The translations under genes and the position numbers were made by a program. Below are positions 13,901-59,300 of a stretch of 64,000 bases of DNA, in pieces. Numbering within the stretch: position 1 is the first letter of the stretch; each line of letters begins with the position of its first letter. Source of the stretch: Salpingoeca rosetta (Eukaryota; Protista; Choanoflagellata). The notes beneath the pieces are model-generated. The model searched no databases and was not told where the DNA came from. It was given only the letters and a program-made list of their open reading frames with translations. Where the stretch lies: positions 477,230 to 541,229 of the forward strand of contig JAWQFM010000022.1 in NCBI GenBank assembly GCA_033442325.1. The letters run 5' to 3'.

Positions 13901-16900
13901 GAAGACGCGAGTCCGGCACTGGCATCCACGCCGCGGCTGTGCTCAGAGGCGATGGCAGCGTCCATCGTGTTATGGTTCTGCTGTGCCGTCGACGCTTCAG
14001 CCGAAATGTCACGCTGCAGATCCTGTGCGGTGGCGGTGCGGGCATTGCCGATGCTGCTGGTCTCTTGGCTGAGCTCACTCGTGCGCCGGGAGCGGCGGGC
14101 TGTCTCGGCAGACAACGATGATTTCACGTCTGCGCGTGCGTTGGCGCTGCGTGACTGCTCGCTGGCAATTCGCGTTTGCAGAGAAGTTTCAGCTGCCGCT
14201 GCCTGCTGCTGCTGCGTGGCCACGGACGTTGACAGCACCGTGACCTTCTCGTGTGCTCTGCTCTGCTCCTTCCTGACAAGGGACGACAGGACAGCCTCCG
14301 CCGCACGGTTTGAAGCGCCAACACCGCTCACGCGTGCCTCCAGCGACTGCTCCGACGACAAGGCTGCAAGTCTGTCCGCGGCAATGGCACGGCTGACACT
14401 TTTCTCACGCTCAATGGCAGCAGATTCTGCAGAGGACAGGGACGTGACAAGCCCAAAGTTTGCCACGACCTTGCCTTGTTGGATGTCGGAGATGGTTTGC
14501 TGCATCTGGTGCGCCTGTGCTGCGTCCCTCTGCGCCTCTGCAGATATGGCAGAGGCCAGGCTGCCCTCCGCTGCCATGGCGGTGGCGGTGTTCTGTGACA
14601 GGTGCGACAGAAGCGACGAGGAGGTGCTGGTGACCCGCTGCTCCTGCTGTGACATGCTGGCTGCAAGGCTGGCGTGATGGGCGAGCGTGCTCGTCTCCAG
14701 TCCAGACAGGGAGGTGCTTAGGTCGCTGCGTGCGTCCGCAGCTCGTGTTGCTTCACTGGTAATCGCCTGTGACAGCCCGCTGTGCACATCGATGGCGCGG
14801 GAATGCTCAGCACCGACTGCCTGCAACAGGCTGGCTGCAGCCACCTGCTGTCTTGCTGCTTCCGTGCTGATTGTTTCCGCGAGCTCGTCCTCCTCACGCG
14901 TTGTGTTGGAGACAAGCACCGCCTGCTTCTGGGACAGCTGGGCAATGACAGAGGCAATCGACGCATGCGCGCGGCGGCCGGTCGACACAGCAGCACTCAG
15001 CTCACTGCCAATGCTCGCTGCAGCTTGTGCTGCACGATCTTCCTCTGAGAGCATGCTTGCAAGCAAGTTCGCGCGCGTGGCGTGTGCCCTTGCCGCTTCG
15101 CTGCTCAGCTGCACCCCAATGGCTGCTTGACTGGCGTTGGCTGCGCTTGCGTGGGAGCGAATGGCATCTGCGAGCGACGACGACGATGAACGAAGGCCTG
15201 CCTCAGCTGCCACTGCGCGTGACGTCTCCGACTGCATGGAGGCTTCCAGCACGCTGACGGCGGACGCTTCTCGTGCCGTCTCCTGCGACAGGAGCGATGC
15301 GAGGGCGGCGCGCCTCTGCGTCGCTGTTGAGGAGATTGTGTCGATAACCTGTTCCAGCGAAGCCTCACGCGACTGCGCAACAGTCACCCGGTTGCGTGCA
15401 CGGCGCTGCTGCGTGCTCGCCTGCGAACTGAGTTTGGACTCTGCGTCGAGAGCCAATGAGGTCTCCACGTCCAGTTCCATCGACAGCACCAGGCGCTGCT
15501 GGCGTATGCGGTTGCTGCCCGTCTGCACGGCGGCATCGAGCGCCGATTCAGCGGCAGCTAGTTCCGCTTGTGCGTCTGTCAGCAGTGTTTCCAGCGACTG
15601 GATGACAAACAGCTCCACATCGTCGCCTTTGGGGCCCACGGGACCAACATCGCCCTGTGCTCCTTTGTTGCCGGTTTCGCCCTTGATGCCCTGTGCCCCT
15701 TGCACGCCTTGCGGCCCAGGATCGCCCACAGGACCTGGCACAGTGCAGCGTGTACGTATACGTATGTGTGTGTGTATTTGTGAGTGTGAGTGTGAGTGTG
15801 TGTGTGTGAGTGTGAGTGTTTGTGTGTGTGTGTGTGTGTGAGTGTGAGAGAGAGAGTGTGTGTGGAAAAGTGAGATGGAAGCAATTGTCCTGACCACGAT
15901 GATGAAGGTTGTTTTGGTGTGGATGCGACCATGTGTGTGTAAGTGCGATACATGTGTGGTATCTCTCATTCACGCACACACACAAACACACACACACGCA
16001 CACATACACACACGCACACACACACACACACACACACTCTCTCTCTCTGCGCATGGTACCTCGAATTCCCTGTGGTCCTGGGTCGCCCTGTGGCCCCTGT
16101 TCGCCCTGTGGGCCTTGAGGCCCCTGCGGCCCCTGCGGCCCTTGAGGACCAGGATCGCCTGTCAAACAAGCCGCGTTGTGATCGTTGTTGTGAATATGGA
16201 GCCATGAAGGACAGCAGCAGTGATGGCATGTGTATCACACATACTCATGTGCAAATGAAGGAAAATGCGCGCCGATGTGTCAATCACACATACATACACC
16301 TGACACACACACATACATACACCTGAGACACACATATACATACACCTGACATACACACACACACACACACACAAGCACACACATACACACACCTGACACA
16401 CACACACACCTGACATACACACACCTTGTTCACCCTGCGGCCCCTGTGGTCCGGCATCGCCTTGGTCACCCTGGGCGCCCTGTGGCCCCTGTTCTCCCTG
16501 TGGCCCTTGATCCCCCTGCTCACCCTTGATCCCCTGAGGCCCCTGGGGTCCGGGTGCACCAGCGGGGCCCTGGTCACCCTGTACGCCTTGATCGCCCTTG
16601 GGGCCCTGCGGCCCTGGGTCGCCTGCAACCCCCTGTTGCCCCTGTGGTCCCTGTTCTCCCTGTGGCCCCTGCGGCCCTGGTGCGCCCACCTCCCCCTTTG
16701 CACCAGGTGCGCCTTGCTCGCCCACGTCGCCTTTGTCGCCCTGCGGTCCCGGTGCACCGTCATCGCCGTTCACTCCAGGCAGCCCTTGTGGCCCCTGTGG
16801 CCCCTGTGCACCCGCATCCCCCGTTGGGCCCTTTGCTCCTCTATTTCCTTGTGGGCCTTGAGGCGCTGTTGACATTTTTGGTTGCATCAGGGGCATGGTT

Positions 16901-17900
16901 GAAGGGAGGCAAGGGGACAGGCAGGACATGTTGCAAGTTGTGAGGTGGTGATGGAGGTGGGGTTGTTTGTTGTCACAGCAGTGCGTGGGGCCCTTACACG
17001 CGTGTGTGAGAGCGCACAGGTGGCAAGCATACGAACAATTGCATCCAAGCAATGAATCGAAGGCCACAAACCTGCAACGCATTGCCCGCCGTCCCAATAG
17101 TAGTTTGTCGAGCAGCCTGATAATGGAATGACAGTTGTGAATGTGTGCGTGTGCGTGTGTGTGTGCGCGTGCGTGTGTGTGTGTGTGTGTGTGTGCGTGT
17201 GCGTAAGTCCGTGTGCTTGTATTTACAGGACGAGGCAGAAAAGATAAAAAACGAAGCAGGCAAACGTGAAAATGTGCAGGCTCGTGCTGAAAGACATGGC
17301 GACGTGCAGACAGGCGCATGCATGTACATGTAAAATTAACGATCACTTACGGCACACGCGCCCGAATGAGTACTCGGAGTTGCCTTGGCACTCGACGTCG
17401 CACACAAAGAACGCAAACCTGGTTGTGCGTGTGCGTTCGTGCATGCGTGTGTGCGCGTGTGCGTGCGTGTGTGTGTGTGTGTGTGAGTGTGCGTCATGGG
17501 AGTTGACTCAAGTGTTAGTCTTGGCCGGAAGTTGGCATGCAAAGCCACAGATGAAGCAGGCATGCAAAGCCACACACAGTCACACAGAGTCACACACACA
17601 CACACACGCACACACGCACACGCACGCACGCACGCACACACACACACACAGAGCCACACAGTCAGCCCAGATGATGGCCAGACCTGCGGTCAGTGGAGCT
17701 GCTGTCGTATGCGGAGGAGATGCCGCGAATGGCCTTGCGGATGCCGGGGTCATAGTTGAGCGTGCCTTTCAGACTATTGATGTATGACGTCCAGCTGCAA
17801 GGTATTTTGGAGAGAGGAAAGCGAATGTGAGAGGAGGCAGTGGAGTAGGGCGCAGTGAAATGCTCATGTGAAATAAGCACGTTTGATGAACAAGAACGTG

Positions 17901-17937
<37 letters not shown>

Positions 17938-18943
17938 GTGCACAAAAGTACAAACACATACACACAAAAGTACAAACACAGAAAACATGTCCGCACCTGC
18001 AGCTACTTTGGTACGTGATGCCAGAGTTGAGCTTTCCGCAGGAAATGGACCAGACTCGATCCTGTCAGCGACAAGTAGGAAGAATGGGAACGTGAGGGAG
18101 GCAGTGCGGGTGGTCTTGGTTGTGCAACGCATTCCTTGAGATCAGTATGTTATATGACAAGACCTTCCAGTCAAAAGGCACCTCGTTTGTGTTGCTGTGG
18201 ACGCTTGCAAGTCCCGTCACAAAGGAGTCAACTGGCATAAAAGCAACGCAAGCAAGCAGAAGCAAACACATGATGAGGTTCGGTGAGGCATGATCCGGAG
18301 GACACACACGTGAGGGGGGGGGGGGAGTTGGAGAGAGGGACTGTCATGCAAATGTAGTGCAAACAAATGACGCAGCTGCGACTGTACGTGTGCATGACTA
18401 TGGCATAATAACTGAGCCACGCCCACAACATCGCACCCTTCTTCCCAGACCCACACAGAACGCCACCCCCTTTTCACACTAACCTGGGCATGTGTATGAG
18501 AAGGCTTGCTTGTAGTTGTTGAGAGAAGCCTCTGCTGTGTGCTTGAAGGACAAGCTTGCAGCTTCGCAGTGGAAGGCCCATTGTCGGTCGTGATTACTGT
18601 TGCTGTACACGGAGTAGACGCCTGTCAAAATGGTGTCCCCACCACACTCGAACGCCAGGTCGTTGTCAAAGTCGTTGAGATACCCCGTGAAGTCGGAGGG
18701 TTGTGCCGTTATTCGATGGATGCCGCAAGCAAGTACCAGAGCCATTAGCAGCCACACGATGCTGCGTCTGCTGCAGCATGTTCTGCAGCCTCGTGTTGTT
18801 GCTTGTAATCGTGTGTGCTGCTGATGTTGTTGTTGTTGTTGCTGTTGATGATGTGAGCGTGTTTTGTCTTCGTCCCGCACCACCGTCACCACAACGCACG
18901 GCGCCTCTGGGTGCCGGTGCGCGTGTTTGTGTTGCACTGCCAT
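10993..18943 (-). CDS. Paralogue A: dermatopontin-like head / EGF-like / collagen / coiled-coil stalk type-I membrane protein
   Basis: Hydrophobic leader [13 protein letters not shown]. Three dermatopontin-like repeats ([13 protein letters not shown]...HDRQWAFHC; SVHSNTNE|DRVWSISC; WTSYINS...TDRR|FAFFVC). EGF-like exon ~17072-17116. Collagen exons 16425-16865 and 16060-16158, last exon 10993-15734. Ser/Ala stalk, RRRR and RTRR sites, poly-Thr, TM ~12110-12178, tail with NPLY, YETI, YLNV. Start codon provisional. Confidence 0.85.
15653..16833 (-). repeat. Copy 1 of a ~1.1 kb near-identical inverted duplication (partner 56969-58038) covering collagen exons and two introns
   Basis: The reverse complement matches 56969-58038, including intron text such as catgccatcactgctgctgtccttcatggctccatattcacaacaacgatcacaacgcggcttgtttgacag. 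The ORF track shows the same spurious peptides ([31 protein letters not shown]; [28 protein letters not shown]) at both sites. Confidence 0.95.
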
Positions 18944-19382
18944 CACTGGCGCAACATGGGCAGAGCCGTGTACTTGAAGGAAGCAAGACCGGGCGGATGT
19001 AGGGAAGAAGGACAACGCGTGTGTGATTGTTCTGGGGCCGTGGAGTGCAGGCATCGAACCAAACACCACCACCACACACAAACCAAACACGCAAACAAAC
19101 AAACAAGAACACAGAAGACAGTCGGAGAAGAAGCGACGCGAAATGGCATGTTTGCGGAATATTCACAAATATCTTCAACCAAAAATCCGCAATTCAGGCG
19201 TTCGAGGCTGCAGCGAGTGTTTGGTGGCGAGCGAGTGTTTGAAATGGTGTGAGACGCTGCGAGCGCAGAGACAACAACCAACAGTGGTGGTGGTTGGTGG
19301 TGTTGTTGTCGATGGTGTTGGTGATGATGAAGCATAAGCCATGCCATGGCAAGAAACGAGCGAGAGGATCAATACATAAGCG

Positions 19383-20787
19383 CTACGCACTGAGGCTGCT
19401 GGTGTCATCCGTGACTTCAAGAGACAGCTTGGTGTTGCTTGGACTGGACACCTCGTCTGCATGGCCTTCGTCCTCTTGTTGCTCTGTTGATGACAACACC
19501 AGCAGGTGAGGGAGGGGGGAGAGGAAGGGAGTACATGTACGAACCCATGCTCGCACGCAGGCACACAGATAGACAGACACACATACACACACGCACGCAC
19601 ACCCGAACACACACACGAACACACATACACACGCACACACACAACACACACGCACACACACACACGCGCGCAGAGCTTGCATCGCTGTCCCTACCTGCGC
19701 CCTCGTCGCCGGCTTCTTCTGTAGTCTCTGCTGGCGTTGCCTCTGGCTCTTGTTTACCCTCCTCCTCCTCCTCCTCCTCCTCCTCCTTGTTCACTTCATC
19801 TCCTGCAGCCTGTGTATCAGCTTCCTTGCCAGCATCAGCCTCCTCCCGTGGTGTGGGCGTCTTTGCCGTGGCTTCTTCCTCCCCACCTTGCTCGCCAACT
19901 TCCCCCTCTTTGTCCTCCTTGTCCTTCTTTACCTCCTTGTCCTCCGCCTTTTCATCCTTTGCTTCCGTCTGCCCTTCCTGCTCGCCTTTGTCTGGTGTCG
20001 GTGTCACATCACCATCACGCTCGCCATGACGCTCAGCATCGCCATCTTCGTCATCGGCCACCTCTGCGTCGCCGCTTTCGCCCTGTTGTGTGTCCGGCAC
20101 CTCCGGTGTGGTGGTGGTCACCGTCGACACTGCGCTGTCAGCGACTGCATCATCAGGCGAGGGCGCTTCCTCTGACTGCTGCTGCTGCTCGGCAGCACGT
20201 TCTTCTTCGTCCTTGACTGCATTGGTTTCTTCTTCTTCTCCTTGGTGTTCTGCTGCCGCCGCTGGTCCTTCGGTTGTGTCGTCACCCGTGTCTGCTGCTG
20301 TCGCTGCGTCGTCTTCTGTCGTCTGTTGCTGTTGCTGCTCCTCCTCCGCAGCCTTCACGTCTTCCTGGTCGTGGCCCTCGGGCAGAGGGCACAGCGGGCA
20401 CTGTGCAAACAGGGAGACAGTGCTTGGGAACTGCTGTGTGACACTGGAGTACGTGAACACGGCCGTGGCCAACGGCAGGCCCTCGTAGGCCTTGAGCGCC
20501 TCGCGTCTGGCTGCATCGTCGGCCTCGCGCTGCTGTTGGATACGCTGCCGCTCTGCTTCGGCCTCCTGCGCCCTGCGCCTTTGCGCTTCTGCTTCCTCCG
20601 CCTGCTTCTTGGCGATGTAGCTGTTGATCTCGTCCTGCTTGGCCTGCTCCCTGTCACGCGCGTCGCATGCCTGGCGCAGCAGCGAGCTGATGTGGCGGAT
20701 TGGGTCCTCGGGCTGGTACTTGGCGACGTCGGCCATGGCACGCACCAGCATGTCGCCGACCGTCTCTCGGATAAACGCGGCTTCCAT
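19383..20787 (-). CDS. Dpy-30-motif (DYDC/RSP2-like) protein with coiled coil and long acidic tail; exons 19695-20787 and 19383-19483
   Basis: N-terminal FIRETVGDMLVRAMADVAKYQPEDPIRHISSLL matches the Dpy-30 dimerisation motif, followed by an E/Q/R coiled coil and a Glu-rich region. A GTAGGG donor and CAG acceptor join in frame. Confidence 0.75.
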
Positions 20788-21128
20788 CCCTGCAGTTGCC
20801 AAATCAAATCTGGCCAAGAGGTGGGCACGAGGCAAGACAAATAGACAGCACGTGGGATGCAGCCGAGAAAGATGACGCAACGAGCAAGCATGCATGCATG
20901 GAAACGGGCGGTGACATGAGCCAAAGTGAACAACAAAACAAGAGTATGCCAAAGCATGTATGCAAACAAAACAAACAAGAAGGGCAAACTTGCCAAGCAA
21001 GAGTCAACTCAAACAAAGCGCACTTGTTTGTCGTCAATGTCACGCACACATACACGTGCACACGAGTCGGCTGGTGTGCGGGAGACAAAACAGGGACGAA
21101 CACCACCACCACCACCACCACCACCACC

Positions 21129-21159
<31 letters not shown>

Positions 21160-21485
21160 CCAACACCAACACCAAGCGCACCTTGTTGTTGTTCCGTCTT
21201 TGAAGAAGAAGGGGAGGGCGCGTTTGGCGTTGTGAAGATGGAAAATTGAGGCAAAACGTTCGTCAATTGTCGGCTGTGCCAGCAGCCAGACGGGAGGACA
21301 AGCAAGCAAGAAGCAAGCGAGATGCTGCTGGTGGGTGTGTGCTCTTGTGTGTGTGTGCGTGTGTGTATGCTTTTGTATGTGTATGCTCTTGTGTGTGTGT
21401 GTGTATGCTCTTGTGTGTGTGTGCTTGTGCGGGTGTGTGTATGAGACTCAAGTGTGCATTGTGCCTCATTACCCACTGATGATGT

Positions 21486-22019
21486 ATGTCCTGCACCTTG
21501 CCCTGTTTCGTCGTGCCAATTGTGCAGGCAAGACTTGTACTGGTGCTGGTCGCCAGTCACTGCTTGTGCCCTGCTGTGGCGCAACCATCGCCCCCGAGTG
21601 GCTGGACAGACTACATCAACGAATACGACGAGGAACTGGACTTTACTTGCGCTCCAGGCAACGTCCTCTCTGGTCTCCTCAGCTACCACGAGTAAGCGCA
21701 GACAGAGGAGGCGTGTGTCTGTGTCTGTGTCTGTGTTGTGTTGTGTTTGTGTTGTGTTGTGTTGTGTTATTGCTGTGGTTGATGTTACCCACTTTTTGAC
21801 TGCCAAACGAACACAACACACACACATGCACACACGCACATACACACACACACACGCACCCACGCGCGCACTTTCACACCCATCCACAGCAACAATAAAG
21901 AGGATCGGCGGTGGGCATTCACGTGCAAAGAGGCGGAGCTGTTTGAGCATTGGGAGAGCGGATGGATCAACAACTTTGACGCGCCTGCAAGCATCACCTG
22001 CCCAAGTGCGTGCTCGCGC

Positions 22020-22051
<32 letters not shown>

Positions 22052-22633
22052 GAGCGCGCGCGCCTGTGAAATCCGCGCTGAATTGTCATGAACTTCGCCT
22101 GTCTTTGCCTGCGAATGTTTCAGCCAAACTTGTCTCTCATTGTTGCTCACTCGTTGCTTACTTCTTGTGCCACAGGCGGCTTTGCACTCACCGGCCTACG
22201 AAGCTACCACGACTCAAACAATGAGGTGAGCCTATGGAAGTCCAAGCCGTTCACCTTACACGCGTGTACCCATAGGATCCACGCACACATACACACACAG
22301 TGCATACATATACATACAGTGTACACATACAGATGCATGCACAGACAGAGTGTGCGTACGCCTTGTTTTGCTTGCAAGCAGCCGCTCACTGTCTCACCCT
22401 GATGCGTGTGCTTGTTTGCGCTTACAGGACCGGAGATCGCAGGCCCGTTGCCAGCGGTTCACCAGCCCGCTCGCATATGAGACATCGTGCGCGTGGACGA
22501 ACTACATCAACACCTTTGATGACCCCCTCTCTTGGTCCGTTTCTTCCACCCGCGTCATTCGTGGGTTTGGCTCCTACCACAGCAACAACAAGTATGTCAC
22601 ATGCGCTTGCGCTGTGTGTGTGTATGTGTGTGT

Positions 22634-22724
<91 letters not shown>

Positions 22725-23507
22725 CTGCATATTCATGTGCAAGTTTGCACCGTACCGCCTCACTCCACCCCGCCACTGCCGTCACACCACCACCCCGCCA
22801 CTGCCGTCACACCACCACCCCGCCACTGCCGTCACACCACCACCCCGCCACTGCCGTCACACCACCACCCCGCCACTGCCGTCACACCACCACCCCGCCA
22901 CTGCCGTCACACCACCACCCCGCCACTGCCGTCACACCACCACCCCGCCACTGCCGTCACACCACCACCCCGCCACTGCCGTCACAATGCAGCGAGGATC
23001 GACGGTTCAAATTCCTGCACTGCGGCGTTTCCTGCTTCCAACCGGCCGTGCAGTCCGATGCACAATGCGGTGAGTACCCATCCATCCCCCTCATATCCTC
23101 TTCTTCGGCACCTTGCCATCCAAACACTCATGTTGTCGTTGTTGTTGTTGTTGTTGTTGTCGTCGTTGTTGTTGTTGTTGTCGTTGTTGTCGTTGTTATC
23201 GTGCAACACGAGTGTTTGGTGTGGTGATACGCTGACTCAAGTCCCCTCGCTGCGTGCATTGCTGCTGTGCTTTTGTGTCGCGCTCATGCCTTCTTCCCGT
23301 CTCCTGCCGTCTTGATCACTCACTGCCTGTAATCAGAATGCACCTCCGACTACTTCAAGAACCACGGAACGTGCCAGCAAAGTGAGTGAATGTGTGAGTG
23401 AGAGTGTGAGTATGTGAGGTTGGACATGTTATGTGCTTGTGTGTGATATGATAACTTGTACGTCGCACTTGTGTCACTATGCATCCTGTCACTGCGTTCC
23501 CCCCACC

Positions 23508-23585
<78 letters not shown>

Positions 23586-26500
23586 ACACACAGTTCCAAT
23601 TGGTGCACCCGGTCCAAAGGGGTTCACGGGCGATACCGGCGCGAAGGGTCCACAGGGTCCACAGGGAGCACGCGGCCCGCAAGGCGCTCCAGGTACTTGC
23701 ATGCACACATGCACGCACACATGTGTTGAGCTTTTGATGTGTGTGTGTGTATTCATGTGTTTGTACGTACAAGCATGTGGAAAACCTGTACACGTGTGTT
23801 TCCAAGTGTGTTGGGGGGGGGGAATCTCGCTTGCTAGCTCGCTTGCTTGCTTGTTTGGTGTTTGGAGTCTGCCACTCCTACCTTATGCATATCCGACATC
23901 TTTTAACATCCTTCACGCCATTGCCACAACCATCTTCCCCTGCTCCCTGCACGCGGCACGCTGTCACCGTCCAAAGGCCAGGACGGTGCTGTTGGCGCCA
24001 AAGGGATCAAGGGCGACATGGGCGCACCAGGACCAGCCGGTCCGCAGGGCGATCAAGGTGCACGCGGTGACGCGCCATGTCGCACCTGCACACTGACTGC
24101 ATGCTTTGTCTGTTTGCATTTGACAGGGAGGGCGGACGGGGTTGCAAGGTTTCTGTTGTGACATGACTATTGGTGTTCATGCACGACCTCTGCCCAACAT
24201 GAGCTTGCATACATACACACTCACTCACTCACTCACTCACTCACTCACTCACTCACTCACTCACTCACTCACTCACTCACTCACTCACACAATCGTCCAT
24301 GTCTGTTCACAGGTTCTCCTGGCCCCATTGGACCTCAGGGGCCTGTGGGGGTGCCTGGCCTTCAAGGCGTCAAGGGACCACAGGGGCTGCCGGGGCCACA
24401 GGGCGACCAGGGCATCAAAGGTGCGGCGCCATCGTGCTCTCGTGTGCACGTGCTCATTCTGTTTGCTTTCCGTTTTTTTTTTTCTTTGTTCATTCTGACC
24501 AAAACAGTGACGGCTACAGTGCCAGCATGTTCGTGTCCGCAGTTGCTCGATGCCTTTCCTTGCTGCACGTGGCGTTTCACCCTTTTGCATATCGCCCCTC
24601 TCCCTCTCTATTGTTCTCTTTCTTTCTCTCCCGTTCTCTTTCCCTGCTGTCTTCAAGCTCTTCACGCCCTTTGCTGCCTCTTTGCGTTGTGTGTTGTCCT
24701 TTCTCATGACCGTTTATCGTTTGACCAATTTACTCAGGTGTTCAAGGTGATCCCGGCCCACAGGGCAGCCCAGGTCCCAGTGGCATCCAGGGAGATAAGG
24801 GTGCGTGAATGTGTATGTGCGTGCATGAGTGTGATTGTGTGTATTTGTGGGCGTGAAGATGAACATGTGCTTGTGTGCGCGTGCGTACGCAGCAGCTTCA
24901 CTTTGCTCCCATATGCTGAACATCACTTCGCTGAAGCACAACCCAAGCGTCCAATCTCTTGTTCTCATCATGCCCTCTCCCCACCTTCCACTGTCCCTCT
25001 CCACCCAGGCCCTGTGGGCGATATTGGGTTGCCCGGGCCACAAGGAATTCCCGGCCCAAAAGGACCAACAGGTGAATGCTCCCGCTGAATTTGCAACTGG
25101 ATGCAAGGAACCCTTACACACACACACGCACACACACACACACGCACACACACACACACACGCACACACACACACACACGCACTCACTCACTCACACACA
25201 CACACACACACACTCACAAACTCACTCACACACACTCACTCACTCACTCACTCACTCACGCACACATACACATACACTCACTCACACACACACACATACA
25301 CATACACTCACTCACACACACACACATACACACACATACACATACACTCACTCACACACACACACACACACACACATACACTCACTCACACTCACTCACA
25401 CAACACGTGGCACCGCCAACGACAGGCCCTGTTGGCGTGCGTGGATTGAAAGGGCCAATGGGCGACCCTGGGCCCATTGGCGTACAAGGCGATGTTGGTG
25501 CACAAGGCCCCCAGGGAATCAAAGGGCTGCAAGGGTCACAGGGGCCACAGGGCCTAAAAGGAGCGCAGGGCCCACAAGGCGATCCCGGCCTGCAGGGTGT
25601 CCAGGGCGACAAAGGCACAACAGGTGACCAAGGTCCTGTGGGTCCAAAGGGCCCTCGTGGCGAAGATATCAACCCAGCGCTGATCCAGCACCTGCAGAGC
25701 AACATCTCAATCGAAGCGTCACAGACCAGCGACGCTGCCGAATCCTTGAATGCGGACATATCCTCGCGCATCGTCAACACGTCGCTCACCACAGACGAGC
25801 TCATGCGCAGCGCCATCTCGCACGAGACGCAGCGCCAGGCCGCCGCCCGCTCCATGCTGAGTCTGCAGATTTCAACAGACCAGGCCGCCCTGTCCAGTGA
25901 AGTGCAGCGCGCCACGCAGGCGGAGTCCTCCCTCTCCGTGTCCGTGGCCGGGCTGAGCGGCGCCGTGGTGGGCGGTGTCTCCTCTGTATCGCAGATGATC
26001 AGCGCAATGGACAGCGGTGCCGTCGCGCGCGAGGCGTCCCTGCACGTGCGCGCCAGCAACGAGCGCATCAGGGCAGACAGCGCGCACGCCTCGCTAGAAT
26101 CGCAACTCCAACAGCAGGCCAGCGCGGTGGCGGCTGCAGACGCACGTGCGCGCAGCACAGAGGACATGCTTGCAAGCAGCCTGTCGTTGCAGGTGACATC
26201 GAGCATCAGCGGTGAGGCCACCACTGCCCAGAACGTGTCATCCCTTGCAGCCCTGGCCCATGCCCGCCAGCTGTCACTGCAATCGGACATTTCCTCCGCT
26301 ACACAGGAGGCCGGGCACCAGGAGTCATCCCTGCAGCGCCAGGCAGAGTCGCTCGTGTCCGCACTCAGCACGGAGGAGACACGGCGTGTGCAGGCCTCGT
26401 CCTCCCTGGCATCCAGCATACTCGCACGACGATCAGGTGCCATGGCGACAGAGTCATCGCTAGCAGCAGCCATCAGCGCACAGCGCACGTCCACGGGCAC

Positions 26501-29500
26501 CAGCATCTCCTCCCTCACCACTGCCCTCTCCTCTGCCGCATCCCTTGGACAGCAGGCAGACGACAGCCTGGCGTCGCTGCTGTCTGCAACAGCAAACGCC
26601 GCCGTGTCCCGGGAAACGAGTCTGCAGCACACGCTCGACAGCGCCGTGTCCCTTGCCTCGTCTGCAGAGGCGACACTTGATCGCGAGCTCAGCATCGACG
26701 TGTCGCGTGCCGTGTCTGCAGAGGCGTCCATATCCACGGCCGTGCAGGACCGCATCTCCACTGCAAAGGCGGAAGAGGCTGCGCTCGACAGCGCGCTGCA
26801 GTCACTGCATGATGTTGTGCGCGTGTCCAACGCGAACGTCTCCCTGCAGCTGCAGGCGGCCCAGTCCCGTGCTGTGCGCGAGGAAAGTCGCCTGTCCGCT
26901 GCCGTTGTCAGCGAAGCCAATCGGGCCGAGCACGCCCGTGCGGACGTGGCATCCTCCCTCTCCAGCGAGCACGTCCGCGCGCTGTCGGCCGTATCGTCGC
27001 TCAACGCTGCCGGGCATGACGCAATGACCTCTGCGCAGTCATCTGAAGCGCACGTGAGCAGTGCCATCACAGCAGAGGCCGGCCGGGCGCAATCGCGAGA
27101 GGAAATCGTGAGCGCAGCCATCAGCGCGCACACTGTCTCCCGCCTCTCTGCACAGGGCGTGCTGTCATCGTCCATTACCGCTGCTAGCAGCGCGGCAAGG
27201 GTAAATGCTTCGCAGTTGCGCGCAAACGTTGCAGCGCTCTCCTCCACACTGCACCAGCAGCACAGCCAGCTTGAGACCTCGTTTGCGATCGTTGCCTCTG
27301 ACACGTCAACCGCCCTCAGCAGCCTGGAGGTGTTTCGCACTGCAGTCGACACCAGCGCGGTGTCCAGGGCGACGAGCATTGCTGCCGACATCTCAGCAGA
27401 GCAGAGCAGGTCGTCAGCGCAGCACGCGTCGCTCAACTCGCAGCTGTTAACAGCCATCGCTCGGGCAGACAGTGCGCAGGCAGCGTTGAGGGTCGAGGAG
27501 CAGGGTGCGGCTTCCAGTGCCAGCACCGCCGCTTCGTCGCTGGCGGTGGCAGCAGAGCAGGAGCGGGCGCGCGCGGTAAACCGGACACTGGAGCTGAACA
27601 GCCAAGTGTTGCAGGAGCAGAGCCGCGTGCAAGTTGCGCATGCGAGTGTTGCTGTCTCGCTGGCGCAGGTGTCATCGGAAGCAAGCGCGCTCGCCGCCAC
27701 GCACGGCAACTTTGTGTCCTCTGAACAGAGCAGAGGCGCCGACACCCGCGCGTCCATCGCCACAGCGCTGTCTCGCGACACACAAACGCTACACGCCGTG
27801 GACGCGTCGCTGGAGACATTCATCTCGGACGCGTCGCAGCAGCTCATCACAGCGGATCAGCAGCTGTCCACTGAGCTCTCCGGTGTGCAGCAGACGCGGT
27901 TGGCGGCCGACGCTGCGCTGCGTGAGCACCTAACGTTCACGCACAGCACGCTGTCGACCATGGTGGCGGTTGAAGCGGACAAGGCGGTTTCGCGGGAGCA
28001 GCGGGTGCTGGGGCGTCACGCCGCTGTCGCACAGGAGCTCAAGACAACGACGGTGAAGGCAATCATCGCCAACGATGTTGCCTGCACGCTCGAGACGTGC
28101 AATTCACAGAAGATTGTCATGTGTCCCAGCGCGGCCCACCCAAACGCTGGTGCAACGACAGGCCTGGTGCAGGATCTGCTACTGGCGTTTCAGGCCAACC
28201 CGGAACGCTGGGTGCTCGACACATCGCGACAGCCAAAGCCGTCCACAATCGGCTTACAGGACCTTCGCATTCCGCGCGCATACATTCGCACGTCGCGGCA
28301 GGATGACGCATGCCTGGAGTTTGACGTGGATGTGGGCAGCGAGGCGGCGTACACGGCCGACTACACCGCGCCGGCACAGCAGCAGCAGCAGCAGCAAAGA
28401 CGGCGGCGGAGGCGGAGTGTTGGAGATGTGCGGGCGCCTGGCACTGACAGCACTGGTGGTGCTGATGGCGCTGGTGGTGCTGATGGCGCTTCATCTAGTG
28501 GCATGGAATACAAGAACTCGAACCACCAGCAACAGTTGCGGGACCAACTATCACAGCAGGAGCAGCAACAGTCTGTCGCGCGTTCGCGCCGGGTTGCCTT
28601 TGTGTCTGACGATGACTTGGCAGAGTGGACGCGCCAGCTCATGATCACGGCTGGTGCGTCGCCCACTGTCGATGCCACTGGCAGGAAGTTGGTTGTTTTT
28701 GTACCTGCAGCCGTGGACGACGCCTTGCAACAGGGCGGAACCAGCAACGGCGACGATGATGTGCTTTCCGTGTCTGCACAACTGAGTTCGCTTGACAAGC
28801 AGGTGGCTGCGGTGCGTCAGCACACGCACACGCTGCTTGCGGACACCATGCGCGCAATGGCCGACTTCAACACGACGTGGCAGGCGCTGCGTGAAGCGGA
28901 GGCCACGATTGAGTCGCGGCTCACCACCACAGCCACCACGACCACGACCACGACAACGACCACCACAACCGCAACCACGACGACGACAACAACAACGACA
29001 ACAACGAGCAGTGCACCGGACAGAGCGGGCGCGAGCACGTCCGTATTTGGCTCTGCGCCGCCGCTGCTGGTTTATGTTGCGATTGGCAATGCTGGCGCCA
29101 TCATCATCGCCGTCATCGTCCTGATTGTTGTGCGGCGGCGGTACGCCAGCCAGCCCAAGGTGCACGTGGCCAAGAAGCGCCAACCCCCCAACAAGCACTT
29201 GTCCACCTCGTCCCTTCCTGCAACAGCAACAACATCCCCGTGGCGCCATTCGTTTGTTGGTGCCGGCGCTGGCGTCCGCAATTCCTTCAGCGGGGACATG
29301 CCTGCTCTCCGCCGCCACTCCTCCTCGTCCACGACCATCATCGACGAGATGTTGGGGGCGCGCACGGTGACGAACCCGCTGTTCCACACGGCGATTGAGG
29401 AAGCAGACGAGGCGGAGGGTGCGAGTCAGTACTACCAGCAGGTGGAGCCTGTGAAGGAAGATACAGACTCCGACGTGTTTGATCTCGACGCCATCGCCGG

Positions 29501-29507
29501 AGAGTGA
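21486..29507 (+). CDS. Paralogue B: dermatopontin-like head / EGF-like / collagen / coiled-coil stalk type-I membrane protein
   Basis: Head motifs [48 protein letters not shown]|[28 protein letters not shown]-like C|[13 protein letters not shown]. Collagen exons 23594-23692, 23977-24066, 24313-24420, 24738-24800, 25009-25071, last exon 25426-29507. RRRRRRS site, poly-Thr, TM ~29064-29133, NPLF tail. Start provisional. Confidence 0.87.
22766..22986 (+). repeat. Intronic 25-bp minisatellite, ~9 copies (CGCCACTGCCGTCACACCACCACCC)
   Basis: Period of 25 read directly (22771, 22796 ... 22971). Ends just before the acceptor at ~22992. Confidence 0.93.
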
Positions 29508-49125: not shown

Positions 49126-49213
49126 AGACGACTGGAAGTGATGACACGCGGCCGCCAGAGTATTGCATCCTCCGTGCGGACATCGAATGTACGGCATCAC
49201 ACACACACACACA

Positions 49214-49279
<66 letters not shown>

Positions 49280-49788: not shown

Positions 49789-49875
<87 letters not shown>

Positions 49876-52542: not shown

Positions 52543-52620
<78 letters not shown>

Positions 52621-52998
52621 GTGTGTGTGTGCGAGTAGTTGAGGCAGCTGGTGTGAGAGAGCACACGCTTGCTGTTGAGTGAGTGCAGATGCGCACACAC
52701 AAAACATCCAACGCTGTGGTGTCAAAACAACAGCAGCACGTGTCTATGCAAGGCGCAGAACAGCACCTGCTGCGTTCGAGGAATGTGCAAAAGTACGAAA
52801 TGTCGTATTGGTGCCGTGCAATGCTGTCAATGTCTGCACGATCACGCGAATCAAGCCGCGACAGCTGACGGGCGCACACGTGTGAAGAACAAGGGATGGG
52901 GAGGAGCAGGTGGTGCGGTATCGTGTTTGAGTATGGGTTGCACACATGCATGTGGAACAGCGAATGCGCAAATACCCCCACGCACAAACACAGTCACG

Positions 52999-53045
<47 letters not shown>

Positions 53046-54458
53046 CATACACACACACACACAAACACACAGTCATACAAACACGTACACACGCACACAC
53101 ACATTGCCAAAGCTCACCTCTTGTTCAAGGTCGCGGAGAAGTAGCTTGTGTGCATGCGTGTCATCAATGCCATTCCCGTCATTGTCCTCGTCGTCATCGC
53201 TTGCATCGCACATCGCATCCACAGCATTGTCGCCGGCAGGGTGGGTGCTGCCAGCACTGGCGTTCTTGGCGCTGTCAGCTGCAGCGCCGCTGCTTCCCTG
53301 CGCCGTGTGCGCTGTGTCTACGACAGCTGCCGAGGCATTGCCACCATAGTCAAAGCCAATGGCAGCAGTGTTGTTTGAGGAGGTTTCTGCTGGTTTCGGT
53401 GCGGGCGGTCCTTTGCGCGCAGACAGCTGACACAAGGCACACATATGTTGCCGTGAGTTGTCGTTGGCAGCAATACAAGTATTGAAGAAGCGCAATATGG
53501 ATAGTGCACGAGAGATAGGCAGACAAGAAAGGCGAGAGAGGGGGATGAATACGGCCAAATGCACACACACACATACACATTCATATACAAATCCACATAC
53601 ACATACATATCCACAAACACACACATACACACATACACACATGCTGCTAACCTGTGGGGAGAATGGATTGCTTGAATCGTCAAGGGCATCGATGAGCCGC
53701 AGGTGCTCTGTCTCGGATATACGCTTGAACGCCGTATGCACCAGGTCACGGTACGCCTCGAAGCGGCGCTCAAAGTACTTGCTGCCATGCTGCATGCGCT
53801 CGTCGGGCTCGCTGGCGTGCATGGAGCTGGGCTGCGAGCTCACTGTGATGCCAGCGTCGACGTTGGACTCGAGGTCGTGCGCTTCCGCATCCATGAGGTC
53901 CATCGCGTCCATGGACGCACGCACGTCGAATCGGTCAATAAGGTGGTCCATGTGGTTCTGCCACGGAACGAGCGTGGCCCGCCCCATGTTGGCGCGCGCC
54001 TCACTCTCCGATACAAAGTGAACGTGACATGGCACCCCCTGAAGCCGCAGCAGCTGCAACGGATCCACTTGCTGTTCAGATCAACAAGGGGGGGGGACGG
54101 GCGTGTTGAGTGCTGCATAAAAGTGCATATCACACAGACACACATACGAACATGCGCACACGTGTGGACACGAACTTACGCGTATACATACACATACAAA
54201 CACGCATATATGCAAGTGTACATGCATCCCAGCAGACACACACACACGCGCGAGCACATACACGCACACACAAGCACACATACACATGCATATACGCACA
54301 CGCGCACACGCACACGCGCGCACCCCACCAACACAACAACCCACAAACTACAGTGCAACCTGCTGGATGGCCTCTGCTTGTCGTTGCTGTGAGCGCTTGC
54401 GTGTGGCAGCGACCAGCTCCTTCAAGTGCCGATCATGCTTGCGCGCAGCGTGCCACAT
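50476..54458 (-). CDS. CLASRP: CLK4-associating serine/arginine-rich splicing factor (SFRS16/SWAP-related, DRY_EERY domain)
   Basis: MWHAARKHDRHLK start; DPLQLLRLQGVPCHVH; LVPWQ...LIDRFDVRA; RRFEAYRDLV; KAVYITSF; long RS domain; KLTPMERMQLRLKMQLQK near the C-terminus. Confidence 0.88.
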
Positions 54459-54606
54459 CGTCCTCCTCACTGCGCTCAGCGTCTTCCGTCTTTCTTGGCG
54501 TGGTTGTAGAAAAGTTGTGCTTGACTTCCGTGAATTTTCCACGCTGCGCTGTTCTCTGGTGGTGTGGAGGAGTGGTTGATTGAGGTTGTGCATGGTGGCT
54601 GGTTGG

Positions 54607-55578
54607 ATGACGATGGCACGACGCCACCACCAACAACAGCAGCCGCCAGGCCAACAACAAAAGCCATCTTCACACAGACAATGCAGCATCATGTGCTGTT
54701 CTTTACAGCTGTTTTCATCATGGCTTTTGGTTCGTGTATTTGCTCGCTAGCTTGTTTGTTGGCATGCTCGTGTGCAACTGTTATTGTTTATGCCTGATTC
54801 TCGAAGGTTGTGCATTGCACTGCCGCGCATGCTCACCGTGGTTCCATGGGACGCAATTAACTGTGACAGATTCTGGTCTTGCTGTTGGCTCAAGTGCCTC
54901 TTGGACACACTCAACAAGAACCAGCCTTCAGAGGCCGAGGTGTGACCCTTTGTATTGCGTACATCGTGTGGGTTGTGTGGGTTGTGTGCTTGTGCGGTGT
55001 GTACATCGTGTGCGTTGTGCGCGTTGTGTGGGTTGTGTGCTGTGCTTCACAATCCCACATCAAATCTGACTTGCCTAAACCATCTCCCTGGCTTTGTCGC
55101 TTGATGCCAACCGCAGCAGGTCCTCGGCCGCTGCAATCAATGCCGTCATGGCGGCAATTTCACGCTTTGCCGTTTGCACAGCTTCCACATCACGTCGTCG
55201 ATGACTGGCAACAACGTGTCTTGCAAATACCCCAGCAAGGTTCCCAAGCACTGGCTTGTTTGTTGACTTGCTTGCTTGTCCATCCATCTGTGGCATCTAC
55301 CTCCTCACCCTGTATGCCTCTTGTTTGTCCTGCATGCCTCCTGTTTGTCCTGCATGCCTCCTGTTTGTCTTGTGTGCCTCTTGTTGAAGTTGAATGCTTG
55401 CACTCCTTCACGCTTTCCCCTCCTCACTCCCTCATTACTGTATCTGTATCATGGTGGCATCAGGCCCACAACTGGATGTACAAGGCGCATTGACACACCT
55501 GACCGCTGCCATGAACGCGTCGCAAGCGCCTCTTACGCCCGAAGCCGTTATGACAGCATATTGCATCCTGCTGACGCC

Positions 55579-55635
<57 letters not shown>

Positions 55636-56273
55636 CAGTCCGAAGCTCCGTGACTTTGACGTGTATGTACGAGGCCGAAGGCTGACTGCGCCCAGTGAGC
55701 TGCTGCCACGCTTCCAGCTCCTCTTGAACGACACCTTCTCTCGCATTCACACGGCCACGACGCAACACCTGTCGCACCTGCATGCGCACACGGCAATCGT
55801 CACGGCTGCGGCGGATATGCTGTTTGACGTAACCCTCCGCCTGCGGCCATTCGTCCAGCACAACGACGTTATGGCGTGCGTGCTTGTCAACGCGTTTCTG
55901 CAGCAAGGCGGTGTCGCCCTGCCTGTCGTCTACACCAGCAGTGACTCGCTCCATCGGCGCATTGATGAGGCCGTGCACCGCGGGCCCCCGCACGTGCCGG
56001 GAGCATTGGCCAAGGCCCTCTTGTCGTCTTACTGCGACATGTTGCAGCGTGATGACCGTGGCCTCGTGCCTGCAGGCATTGTCGCTTCCATCGCTGCCAC
56101 GGGCAACATCTCTGCTGCTGACATTGACACGTTTTCTCGAAGTGTCTGCAGTTACTATGTGCAGAAGAGCATCGACCATGGCAATGCTGCAGGCGATGCT
56201 GCTGTTGCGCCAGCTCCACCCGGGGTGCAGACACCATCTTCCCGGCACCACGGTCGCCGCCGCCTCCTGCATC

Positions 56274-56344
<71 letters not shown>

Positions 56345-59300
56345 GTGGTGCATGCTTTGCAGCGGCGAAGCAATCCGCCTGCGCCGGTCGCGGAATCCAC
56401 GTCCGCATTCATCAACGACTACGACCAACCTGGCGAACTGACATGCGGGCGCGACTACATCCTCACCCACGCAGACAGCACGTACGACAACGCCCACGCT
56501 GATCGGCGGTGGCGGTTCACGTGCCAGCCAAGTCGCACCTACCACAGCTATGAGACGGGGTTTGTCAACACACACCAGCAGACCGTGACGTTTCTGTGCC
56601 CGGACAACTATGCCATCGCGGGGGTGTACAGCGAGCACGACAACGTGGCAAAGGACAGGCGGTGGCGGTTCCGCTGCAGCCAGATCCTTTCAACCACAGC
56701 ATCCCAGGGCGCATGCACGTTCTCTGCGCCCTCTACGCTTGGTGGTTCACAATCATTCACCACCCCCACAGGCACGTTTATTCGCGGCGTGTACACCACA
56801 TACTCCACCAGCGCCCACGACCGGCGCTACTCGTTCTACTACTGCCAGCTCAACTGCGGCAACAACGCGCTTCAGACGCAGTACGCGTGCCAGTGCAAGG
56901 ACGGGTACACGTTCCAGGGCGGCAGCTGCGTGCGCGGCACCAAAGGCAGCACGGGCCCGCAAGGCGACAAGGGCCCAACGGGGGATGCGGGTGCACAGGG
57001 GCCACAGGGGCCACAAGGGCTGCCTGGGGTGGACGGCGATGACGGTGCACCCGGACCGCAGGGCGACAAAGGCGACGTGGGCGAGCAAGGCGCACCTGGT
57101 GCAAAGGGGGAGGTGGGCGCACCAGGACCGCAGGGGCCACAGGGCGAACAGGGACCACAGGGGGCACAGGGGGTTGCAGGCGACCCAGGGCCGCAGGGCC
57201 CCAAGGGCGATCAAGGCGTGCAGGGCGACCAGGGCCCCGCTGGTGCACCCGGACCCCAGGGGCCTCAGGGGATCAAGGGTGAGCAGGGGGATCAAGGGCC
57301 ACAGGGAGAACAGGGGCCACAGGGCGCCCAGGGCGACCAAGGCGACGTCGGACCACAGGGGCCGCAGGGTGAACCAGGTGTGTGCTTGTGTGTGTGTGTG
57401 TGTCAGGTGTGTGTGTATGTGTGTGCTTGTGTGTGTGTGTGTATGTCAGGTGTGTGTTTGTGTGTGTGATTGTGTGATTGACACGTCCACCGCGCATTTT
57501 CCTTCATGTGCACATGAGTATGTGTGATACACATGCCATCACTGCTGCTGTCCTTCATGGCTCCATATTCACAACAACGATCACAACGCGGCTTGTTTGA
57601 CAGGCGATCCTGGTCCCCAAGGGCCGCAGGGGCCGCAGGGGCCTCAAGGCCCACAGGGCGAACAGGGGCCACAGGGCGACCCAGGACCACAGGGAATTCA
57701 AGGTACCATGCGCAGAGAGTGTGTGCATGTGTGTGTGTGTGTGCGTGAATGAGAGATACGCACACACGTATCGCACTTACACACACATGGTCGCATCCAC
57801 ACCAAAACAACCTTCATCATCGTGGTCAGGACAATTGCTTCCATCTCACATTTCCACACACACACACTCTCTCACACTCACACACACACACACATACACA
57901 CAAACACACACATACACACAAACACATACGTATACGTCCACGCTGCACTGTGCCAGGTCCTGTGGGCGATCCTGGGCCGCAAGGAGTGCAAGGGCCACAG
58001 GGCATCAAGGGCGAAACCGGCAACAAAGGAGTACAGGGTCCACAAGGACCCAAAGGCGATCCAGGCCACGATGTGCCGCTCTCTGTGCAGTCTGCACTGT
58101 CGTCATCCGTCTCATCCATGCTCAGCAACGGCACAGCACAGTACGCGGCGGTGTCGACAGCGCTTGCAGCGGCGGCAGCCGAGGCACGGTCGCGCGAGGT
58201 GCAAGTGTACAACATCATCCTCGACAGCGGTGACGATGCGCGCTCTGTGGAGAGCGACATCAGTGCAGCCATCATCACACTCAAACTCGCCGTCAACAGC
58301 GAGAGGACACGCGAATCACAGGCCATCGCCGCCATCAACCAGGACGCGGCTGCCGTCAGCAGTGCTGTGGACACCGAGGGCAACGTGCTACAGTCAGACG
58401 TCAGCCACGCCACATCTCGCGCCACATCGGCCGAGGACAGCGTGGCCAGTGCCATTGCCTCCACCAGCCAGCGGTCCCAGGATATGGAAGCATCGCTTGC
58501 ATCGCGCGTGTCTGGCGTGGCCCGTGATGACTCATCAGCAGCCAGCCGCGCCGCCGCCGCCTCTTCCTCGCTCGCACGCGCCATCTCGCACGAGACGGAC
58601 CGGGCCACGGGGCAGGAGGCAAGCCTGATATCCGCCCTGCAGAGCACGGAAACATCCACCATGCAAGATGAGGCAGGTCTCAGTGCGAGCGTGAGCCTTG
58701 AGGGGCAGCGCGCCGCATCAGAGCGATCACGCATTTCCGGCGCCGTGTCTACGCACGACGACGCCGTGGCGACACACGCCAGCCGTGCTGCTGCCCAGCT
58801 CAGCCAGCTCGACGCCAGCATCGCCGGCGAGCACACGCGCGCGAGCACTGCAGAGTCCAATCTCTCTGCCGCGTTGTCCGGTGGCGTGTCAGGGGCGACG
58901 TCGTCTGAACACGCCCTCAGCGTCGCCATCAGCAGGGAGCAGTCGCGTGCAGCAGCGCAGCAGGGGCAGCTGGATACCGCGCTGGGTGCGGAGCGCAATC
59001 GCACGCGGGCACAGGTGTCGTCCATCGTGTCTGCCGTGTCCAGTGAAGTGCAGCGCAGCGCAGACGCATTGACGCAGCGCGCTGTGTCCATCAACACGGA
59101 GGCCGCCCGCGCATCAACCGCCCGTCAACAGTACGGCACGCTGCTGGATGCCGAGGTGTCGCGCGCACGGCAGGAGGAGGCCGTGTTGGCGCAAACGCTG
59201 TCTGCTGTGACGACGAACCACAGCGAGCACACGCTTGAGGTGAGCCAGGCCATTTCTTCGGAGAGTGCACGGGGTGGACAGGAAGCGGCGGCCATCGCAA

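What the first reader, a model, noticed from the sequence alone, without database searches (positions are those of the whole stretch)
15653..58038. Inverted ~1.1 kb identity block placed so that one crossover swaps heads between paralogues A and C
Seen: A and C point outward from each other. Their collagen exons and two introns are near-identical (15653-16833 vs 56969-58038), while heads and stalks on either side are highly diverged. Heads and promoters lie inside the repeats; stalks, TMs and tails lie outside. Inference: recent gene conversion. Homologous recombination in the block would invert the ~40 kb interval and create in-frame chimeras (A head on C stalk and vice versa) of almost unchanged length, a flip-flop route to surface-receptor variation.
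Basis: partly seen in the sequence, partly recalled or inferred. Interest (0 to 1): 0.75.

Follow-up and report, generated by a model that had tools for sequence, protein, structure and literature searches.

The report
Gene-conversion block between two inverted receptor genes
Two outward-facing, anciently diverged genes for collagen-stalked surface proteins share a 1.1 kb stretch that one gene recently copied from the other; it could in principle let the 40 kb between them flip and swap the genes' heads, but nothing here shows that this happens.

Summary
Gene A (minus strand) at 15653-16833 and gene C (plus strand) at 56969-58038 form an inverted repeat. It covers three collagen exons and both intervening introns. 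Identity is 97.2% at 885 alignable positions outside the microsatellites. Unique intron sequence is as similar as the exons. dS is 0.077 inside the block, while synonymous sites outside are saturated (pS 0.70-0.82). Stalks are about 26-29% identical in protein and heads about 33%. The edges are sharp and lie inside collagen-coding sequence. The genome holds only these two copies.

"Recent gene conversion" is therefore well supported.

The geometry claimed for head swapping is also correct. Heads lie inside the repeat; stalks, membrane spans and tails lie outside. Exon lengths and intron phases match, so a crossover would give in-frame chimeras with unchanged rod length.

No evidence shows that inversion occurs. 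The one gap-free assembly has one orientation and no alternative contig. No site-specific recombinase was found. The head-versus-stalk comparison was inconclusive.

This is a clean new example of a known process and a plausible but untested substrate for inversion by homologous recombination, as at human CTRB1-CTRB2. The organism is probably the choanoflagellate Salpingoeca rosetta and is not human.

The parts
15653..16833 (-). A arm of the inverted identity block. It holds most of collagen exon 1, intron 1, exon 2, intron 2 and the first ~84 nt of the last exon.
56969..58038 (+). C arm of the inverted identity block, with the same content. It is shorter only because of microsatellite length differences in the introns.
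16425..16865 (-). Gene A collagen exon 1 (441 nt). The acceptor ..caacag| lies at 16866-16868 and the donor is CAAG|GT, phase 1. The block begins 32 nt into this exon.
16060..16158 (-). Gene A collagen exon 2 (99 nt, phase 1-1). Its C counterpart is 57604-57702, with 2 mismatches.
10993..15734 (-). Gene A last exon. It encodes the last 13 Gly-X-Y triplets, an 801-aa Ser/Ala-rich helical stalk, a Cys-containing region, the membrane span, a ~405-aa tail and the stop. The block ends at 15653.
17072..19102 (-). Gene A head exons. They encode the signal-peptide-like start plus dermatopontin positions 1-69 (18482-18676), dermatopontin positions ~102-142 (17683-17805), and an exon ending ..[10 protein letters not shown] at 17072 (donor CAG|GT, phase 1). 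All lie inside the repeat.
55394..57377 (+). Gene C first large exon or open frame. It holds an N-terminal region, a poly-Gln run, a complete dermatopontin domain (56414-56857, E 1.7e-38) and collagen exon 1, with no intron between head and collagen. The block begins at 56969.
57957..63544 (+). Gene C last exon. It encodes the collagen end, an 803-aa stalk, a Ser/Thr-rich region, the membrane span and a tail with ~9 tandem 30-aa Tyr/Lys-rich repeats. The block ends at 58038.
16834..56968 (.). The ~40 kb interval that a crossover in the block would invert. It holds the A head, a Dpy-30-motif open frame (19420-21000, minus), paralogue B (21483-29507, plus), a spectrin-repeat/alpha-actinin-like gene (~30.4-42 kb, minus), a DRY_EERY splicing-regulator exon (53076-54068, minus) and the C head. 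It contains no assembly gap.
21483..29507 (+). Paralogue B has the same architecture but is not part of the block. Its collagen is split into six small exons and is only ~60-64% identical in DNA to the block.

Best explanation
A and C are ancient paralogues of a three-gene local family (A, B, C). Each encodes a type I membrane protein with a dermatopontin head, about 72-73 collagen triplets, an ~800-aa helical stalk, a membrane span and a cytoplasmic tail. Recently, almost the whole collagen-coding segment of one gene, including its two introns, overwrote the homologous segment of the other. The mechanism was non-reciprocal homologous repair, i.e. ectopic (interlocus) gene conversion, most simply gap repair or synthesis-dependent strand annealing. 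It would have been primed in the repetitive Gly-X-Y coding DNA, the only part of the two genes with usable nucleotide similarity. The two copies have since drifted apart by about 3%. Because the genes are inverted and 40 kb apart, the converted tract is now an inverted repeat. It is a potential substrate for inversion by homologous recombination that would exchange heads and promoters in frame. That exchange is a possibility created by the conversion, not something shown. Shown here: the block, its limits, its neutral-site identity, its uniqueness and the frame-preserving geometry. Inferred: the conversion mechanism, a single main event, and tentatively the direction A to C, because C has no other detected introns whereas A is intron-rich.
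For: Identity is 96.8% in exon 1 (13/409 mismatches), 97.9% in exon 2, ~96% in the exon 3 part, and 95.6-98.3% in the unique parts of both introns. Overall there are 25 differences in 885 usable positions. Within the block dS is 0.077 and dN 0.018. Outside it pS is 0.695 over 784 stalk codons and 0.82 in the head. Protein identity is 26-29% in stalks and 33% in heads. The edges are sharp within about 10 nt. Diverged Gly-X-Y triplets flank the block in both genes: A ..GPQGNRGA|block|[11 protein letters not shown] and C ..GSTGPQGD|block|[11 protein letters not shown]. Paralogue B shows what collagen coding constraint alone preserves: 60-64% DNA identity. The genome has only two copies of the block. 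Differences are spread fairly evenly (permutation p 0.02-0.13 depending on binning; longest difference-free run not unusual, p 0.72). Both genes keep open frames of 1658 and 1931 codons.
Against: Without an orthologue or outgroup, non-reciprocal transfer is inferred from pattern and not shown by phylogeny. If A and C collagen were as diverged as B's (~62%) before the event, it is unclear how homologous repair started. The alternative is long-running repeated conversion (concerted evolution) instead of one recent event, and the data do not separate the two. The donor direction rests only on intron distribution. Gene models were read from the sequence without transcript evidence.
Confidence: 0.85

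Rival explanations
1. Working flip-flop. Homologous recombination in the block recurrently inverts the 40 kb interval, so populations carry both isomers and express A-head/C-stalk and C-head/A-stalk chimeras. This re-pairing of ligand-binding head with cytoplasmic tail would be used, or at least tolerated, as receptor variation.
For: The arms are inverted with heads inside and stalks outside. Exon lengths and intron phases in the block are identical, so chimeras are in frame. Rod lengths match at 801 vs 803 aa and 72-73 triplets. Repeat length and identity fall within the range that mediates recurrent human inversions (654 bp-24 kb, above 90%; bioRxiv 10.1101/501981). There is a direct precedent for a promoter and exon 1 swap between oppositely transcribed paralogues at CTRB1-CTRB2 (PMC6145291). 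A conversion event proves that the two sites do meet.
Against: The gap-free assembly has one orientation and contains no contig with the alternative junction. The longest perfect identity runs are 108 and 107 nt. The repeat-to-interval ratio is about 0.03. No tyrosine or serine recombinase was found in the genome. Eleven other dermatopontin gene clusters show no comparable blocks, so this is not a family-wide device. The head-versus-stalk site-pattern test shows no resolvable discordance.
Confidence: 0.08
2. Selectively maintained concerted evolution. A and C chains co-assemble in one collagen triple helix. Repeated conversion of the collagen segment is retained by selection because matched helices trimerise in register, while heads and tails are free to diverge.
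For: All three paralogues keep 72-73 triplets and stalks of 801/802/803 aa despite ~26% identity, which suggests a shared length constraint or co-assembly. The tract coincides almost exactly with the triple-helix region. dN/dS in the block is about 0.24.
Against: B has the same lengths but a fully diverged collagen sequence, so identity is not required for the family. Divergence is close to uniform, as after one event. There is no biochemical evidence of co-assembly.
Confidence: 0.2
3. Assembly artefact. One collagen segment was placed in two genes, or the interval was mis-oriented, by the assembler.
For: The region is rich in microsatellites. The assembly is scaffold-level, with one 100-N gap elsewhere in the window.
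Against: The copies differ at 25 substitutions and several indels, and their microsatellite lengths differ. A collapse would give identity. There is no gap between or next to the arms. Each copy is in frame with its own long flanking open frame.
Confidence: 0.03
4. Purifying selection, on the protein, on codon usage or on an intronic RNA, keeps the segment alike without any copying.
For: Collagen is compositionally constrained.
Against: Unique intron sequence is 96-98% identical, as high as the exons. B's collagen under the same constraint is only 60-64% identical. No Rfam family reaches its threshold in the block; the sub-threshold miRNA-like hits are microsatellite artefacts.
Confidence: 0.01

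Closest known systems
Human CTRB1-CTRB2 16.6 kb inversion (PMC6145291)
   Same: Two paralogues are transcribed in opposite directions. Recombination in a shared high-identity segment inverts the interval between them and exchanges promoter, exon 1 and intron 1, leaving both genes in frame.
   Different: In that case both orientations are observed in people and the genes are 97% identical throughout, so only the signal peptide and expression level change. Here only one orientation is seen and the genes are ancient paralogues (~26-33% protein identity). The identity is a 1.1 kb island, and a swap would re-pair a different binding head with a different stalk and tail.
Recurrent human inversions by non-allelic homologous recombination between inverted repeats (bioRxiv 10.1101/501981)
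   Same: Inverted repeats above 90% identity flank a kb-to-100-kb interval. Gene conversion and inversion are two outcomes of the same pairing.
   Different: Those repeats have a median length of 5.9 kb (minimum 654 bp) and are usually intergenic duplications. Here the repeat is 1.1 kb, lies within coding sequence, and recurrence is untested.
RHD/RHCE gene conversion between oppositely oriented paralogues (PMC4824203)
   Same: Inverted neighbouring paralogues about 30 kb apart exchange sequence tracts in cis and so produce hybrid genes.
   Different: The RH genes face each other by their 3' ends and are young duplicates similar along their whole length. Here the genes diverge from each other, and the tract is one isolated domain in otherwise saturated genes.
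Bacterial invertible coding switches such as shufflons and phase-variable hsdS loci (from general knowledge, not tested against a reference here)
   Same: Inverted repeats inside coding sequence allow alternative protein ends to be joined to a constant part by DNA inversion.
   Different: Those systems use short specific sites and usually a dedicated recombinase encoded nearby. None was found here, and this organism is a eukaryote with introns in the repeat.

Membership tests
Interlocus (ectopic) gene-conversion tract | A discrete high-identity block whose identity falls abruptly to paralogue background at both edges | tested here: met
   97% inside the block, 36% and 55% just outside it, and no other detectable DNA similarity
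Interlocus (ectopic) gene-conversion tract | Identity extends equally through neutral sites (introns and synonymous positions) | tested here: met
   Unique intron parts are 95.6-98.3% identical. dS is 0.077 inside the block, against pS 0.70-0.82 outside
Interlocus (ectopic) gene-conversion tract | Both loci already carried homologous sequence, so the event was replacement and not insertion of a new domain | tested here: met
   Diverged Gly-X-Y triplets flank the block on both sides in both genes. Heads (both PF14704) and stalks are distant paralogues
Interlocus (ectopic) gene-conversion tract | Non-reciprocal transfer shown by a tree with orthologues or an outgroup | not testable with these tools
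   No related eukaryotic genome or transcriptome was reachable. The protein word searches and the metagenome scan returned nothing
Inversion by non-allelic homologous recombination (flip-flop) | Repeats in inverted orientation flank the segment, with length and identity in the range known to mediate inversion | tested here: met
   The arms are 1.07-1.18 kb long and 88-91% identical with gaps, or 97% at unique positions. The known range is 654 bp-24 kb at above 90%. Perfect identity runs are only up to 108 nt
Inversion by non-allelic homologous recombination (flip-flop) | Both orientations observed in reads, strains or individuals | not testable with these tools
Inversion by non-allelic homologous recombination (flip-flop) | Recombinant genes stay in frame and spliceable | tested here: met
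   There are no gaps in the exon columns. In-block exon lengths are identical, and both introns are phase 1 with GT..AG in both copies
Programmed DNA-inversion switch (shufflon, Hin or hsdS type) | A dedicated site-specific recombinase | tested here: not met
   PF00589 and PF00239 give no match anywhere in the genome, while the control genomes are positive. No recombinase domain was found in the window's open frames that were scanned
Dermatopontin-domain proteins (PF14704) | Match to the DERM profile above the curated cut-off | tested here: met
   C head 132.7 bits (E 1.7e-38, full length). A head exon 54.1 bits. B head exons 36-46 bits

The most novel reading that the evidence does not exclude
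The block is kept as a eukaryotic recombination switch. Recurrent homologous inversion of the 40 kb interval re-pairs two different dermatopontin heads and their promoters with two different stalks and signalling tails, giving a choanoflagellate clone heritable but reversible surface-receptor variants. This would be a homologous-recombination analogue of bacterial shufflons in a close relative of animals.
Probability: 0.06. Interest if true: 0.75.

Novelty: new member of a known kind. Interest (0 to 1): 0.4.

Why it matters
It is an unusually clean case of domain-limited gene conversion. A single structural module, the collagen helix with its introns, was homogenised between genes that are otherwise saturated with change. 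This shows that low-complexity Gly-X-Y coding DNA can act as a recombination bridge between ancient paralogues. It also creates a testable structural prediction: one crossover would swap extracellular heads between receptors with different cytoplasmic tails while keeping rod length unchanged. If both isomers were found, this would be a simple route to receptor rewiring in a close unicellular relative of animals. If not, the locus remains a good marker of ectopic recombination activity in this genome. It also hints that the A and C chains may share a constraint on the triple helix.

Tried and rejected
Two protein word searches, on the A stalk and on the C post-stalk region, returned nothing, not even the genes themselves. 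An exact look-up of eight window open frames found none in the collection. A metagenome scan for a 30-nt block-intron word found nothing. No second assembly, strain or transcript could therefore be examined.

2. Past head swapping from head-versus-stalk discordance. In the heads, A-B identity is 40% against 33% for A-C and B-C. In the first 800 alignment columns of the stalk, sites shared by only two genes number 106 (A-B), 92 (B-C) and 61 (A-C). There is no resolvable conflict. The sequences are saturated and there is no outgroup, so the test is inconclusive.

3. A family-wide mechanism. Eleven other dermatopontin clusters (20 kb each) have no direct or inverted repeat of at least 150 nt and 80% identity. 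Rejected.

4. GC-biased conversion signal or donor polarity. GC3 in the block is not raised relative to B. Strong-versus-weak allele counts are 7 against 14, which is not significant.

5. Functional intronic RNA. Only sub-threshold microsatellite-type miRNA hits were found. Rejected.

6. Programmed recombinase. None was found.

7. More stalk paralogues in the genome. Searches with the A stalk and the A post-stalk region found only the query itself.
Full report
**What the window is**

The window is eukaryotic DNA: GT..AG introns, CA/TG microsatellites in most introns, about 57% G+C. It comes from a 55.4 Mb assembly of 68 pieces, at C22:477230-541229. I did not confirm that independently. I do not take the contig for human.

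**The observation**

The repeat finder gives ungapped arms of 428 nt (96%), 257 nt (96%) and 184 nt (90%). blastn joins them into 16833-16015 vs 56969-57747 and 15997-15653 vs 57719-58038. Apart from microsatellites and CAG runs, nothing else in gene A (10900-19300) resembles gene C (54500-63700) at the DNA level. The block has only these two copies in the genome; the 200-odd other matches are CA microsatellites. It is the only dispersed repeat of at least 150 nt and 80% identity in the window.

**Anatomy of the block**

The alignment shows that the block holds:
- 409 nt of collagen exon 1.
- Intron 1 (A 266 nt, C 226 nt).
- Exon 2 (99 nt).
- Intron 2 (A 325 nt, C 254 nt).
- The first ~84 nt of the last exon.

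Both introns are phase 1 with GT..AG ends in both genes. There is no gap in any exon column. All length differences are in microsatellites.

The upstream edge lies 32 nt inside A's collagen exon 1, which starts at 16865 after an intron that C lacks. In C the edge lies in the middle of a 2 kb exon that runs from the dermatopontin domain straight into collagen. The downstream edge lies about 10 codons before the end of the triple-helix region. On both sides, both genes retain a few Gly-X-Y triplets that are not alike. Each gene therefore had its own collagen region before the event.

**Why this is copying and not conservation**

- Mismatches are 13/409 in exon 1, 2/99 in exon 2 and 3-4/84 in exon 3. 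In the unique parts of the introns they are 4/129, 2/119 and 1/35.
- Overall there are 25 differences in 885 usable positions, 2.8%.
- Inside the block dS is 0.077 and dN 0.018, with 7 of 197 residues different.
- Outside it synonymous sites are saturated: pS 0.695 over 784 stalk codons and 0.82 in the head.
- Protein identity is 26-29% in stalks and 33% in heads.
- Paralogue B has the same architecture and number of triplets but six small collagen exons. It is only 60-64% identical in DNA to the block. That is the level that coding constraint on collagen alone maintains.
- No Rfam family explains the intron identity.
- The differences are spread fairly evenly, as expected after one main event. 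Repeated full-length events cannot be excluded.
- An assembly collapse would give identical copies. These differ by substitutions, indels and microsatellite lengths, and no gap lies in or between the arms.

**What the genes are**

A, B and C each encode:
- A dermatopontin head (PF14704; C complete at E 1.7e-38, A and B split by introns).
- 72-73 Gly-X-Y triplets.
- A Ser/Ala-rich helical stalk of 801 (A), 802 (B) and 803 (C) residues up to a conserved Cys motif.
- A variable membrane-proximal region, one membrane span and unrelated cytoplasmic tails. C's tail carries about nine near-identical 30-residue Tyr/Lys-rich repeats.

They look like type I membrane proteins that would trimerise and carry the head at the tip. 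The open frames of 1658 and 1931 codons argue that A and C are live genes. Gene models rest on sequence reading only.

**The head-swap idea**

The geometry is as claimed. A is on the minus strand and C on the plus strand, so both are transcribed away from the interval. Heads and 5' regions lie between the arms; stalks, membrane spans and tails lie outside. A crossover at homologous positions in the block would invert 40.1-42.0 kb. That interval also carries a Dpy-30-motif frame, gene B, a spectrin-repeat gene and a DRY_EERY splicing-factor exon, none of which would be broken. The result would be A-head/C-stalk and C-head/A-stalk genes in frame, with unchanged collagen and stalk lengths.

Such events are known elsewhere:
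- Inverted repeats of 654 bp-24 kb at above 90% identity drive recurrent human inversions (bioRxiv 10.1101/501981).
- RHD and RHCE, in opposite orientation, exchange tracts (PMC4824203).
- Another inverted paralogue pair with a conversion mosaic has been noted in this same genome (s1-436073, not tested by me).

**What speaks against an active flip-flop, or is missing**

- The assembly is continuous through both arms and the interval, shows one orientation, and contains no extra contig with the block. This is weak evidence that one isomer dominated the sequenced culture.
- The longest perfect runs are 108, 107, 82, 82 and 74 nt. The repeat is about 3% of the interval length, which is the unfavourable end of the range.
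- No tyrosine or serine recombinase is detectable in the genome. Any inversion would depend on general homologous recombination.
- Eleven other dermatopontin clusters carry no such blocks, so this is not a family device.
- I looked for a trace of past swapping as a conflict between head and stalk relationships among A, B and C. Heads slightly favour A+B. Stalk site patterns give 106 (A-B), 92 (B-C) and 61 (A-C). There is no conflict that can be resolved at this level of saturation.

**Open points**

- If the two collagen regions were as different as B's before the event, initiation must have used short Gly-X-Y microhomologies. Otherwise the segment has been homogenised repeatedly since the duplication. 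Sister-species data would tell which.
- The direction A to C is suggested only by the fact that the two block introns are the only introns detected in C, whereas A has introns throughout.
- The matched rod lengths of all three paralogues allow a reading in which the chains co-assemble and identity of the helix is favoured. B's divergence argues that identity is not required.

**Verdict**

"Recent gene conversion" is supported with confidence about 0.85. The "flip-flop route to receptor variation" is geometrically sound but unsupported, at about 0.06-0.08 as an operating system. This is a new member of a known kind.

**Method note**

Exons were searched separately by reference. Exon columns of the block were concatenated only inside scripts to count codon differences.

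Noticed in passing
window 13330-15618 (A), 25668-28073 (B), 58073-60480 (C), approximate: All three paralogues keep almost the same rod dimensions despite ~26% identity. Each has 72-73 Gly-X-Y triplets, and the stalks run 801, 802 and 803 residues from the collagen end to a conserved Cys motif (NVPC / DVAC / NDAC). This suggests a length constraint or co-assembly of the three chains.
   Followed up: partly
window 62657-63427 (+): The cytoplasmic tail of C holds about nine tandem 90-nt units at 97-99% DNA identity. They encode a Tyr/Lys-rich 30-residue repeat (..[30 protein letters not shown]..). This is a second, very recent repeat-homogenisation or expansion in the same gene.
   Followed up: no
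window 34407-35383 vs 36321-37297 (gene on minus strand): The spectrin-repeat (alpha-actinin-like) gene in the interval contains an internal direct duplication of about 1 kb at 87% identity, offset by 1.9 kb.
   Followed up: no
window 15736-16059 (A intron 2) and 57703-57956 (C intron 2): Intron 2 has a (TG)n-rich run at one end and a (CA)n-rich run at the other, so it can fold back on itself. This produces sub-threshold Rfam hits to microsatellite-derived miRNA families (mir-297, mir-466, MIR2646), which I read as artefacts.
   Followed up: partly
window 55394-56383 (+): The open frame of C continues about 330 codons upstream of the dermatopontin domain, through a run of about 24 Gln, with no signal peptide evident and no Pfam domain at E<=0.01 apart from low-complexity hits. 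C's true 5' exon and signal peptide were not located. A also has a short poly-Gln/CAG run just upstream of its signal-peptide-like start (about 18794-18860).
   Followed up: partly
window 8499-10337 (+): An exon encodes the end of a protein kinase domain fused to a guanylate/adenylate cyclase catalytic domain (PF00211, E 6.9e-56). It lies just outside gene A's 3' end.
   Followed up: no
G000 C19:933-938 kb, C23:1166-1170 kb, C24:600-610 kb, C12:359-364 kb, C4:2293-2304 kb: Dermatopontin-domain exons occur in many small clusters with members on opposite strands, so divergent pairs are a recurring arrangement. None of the 11 clusters fetched has a high-identity block like the A-C block.
   Followed up: partly
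window 1772-1871: This 100-N run is the only assembly gap in the window.
   Followed up: yes
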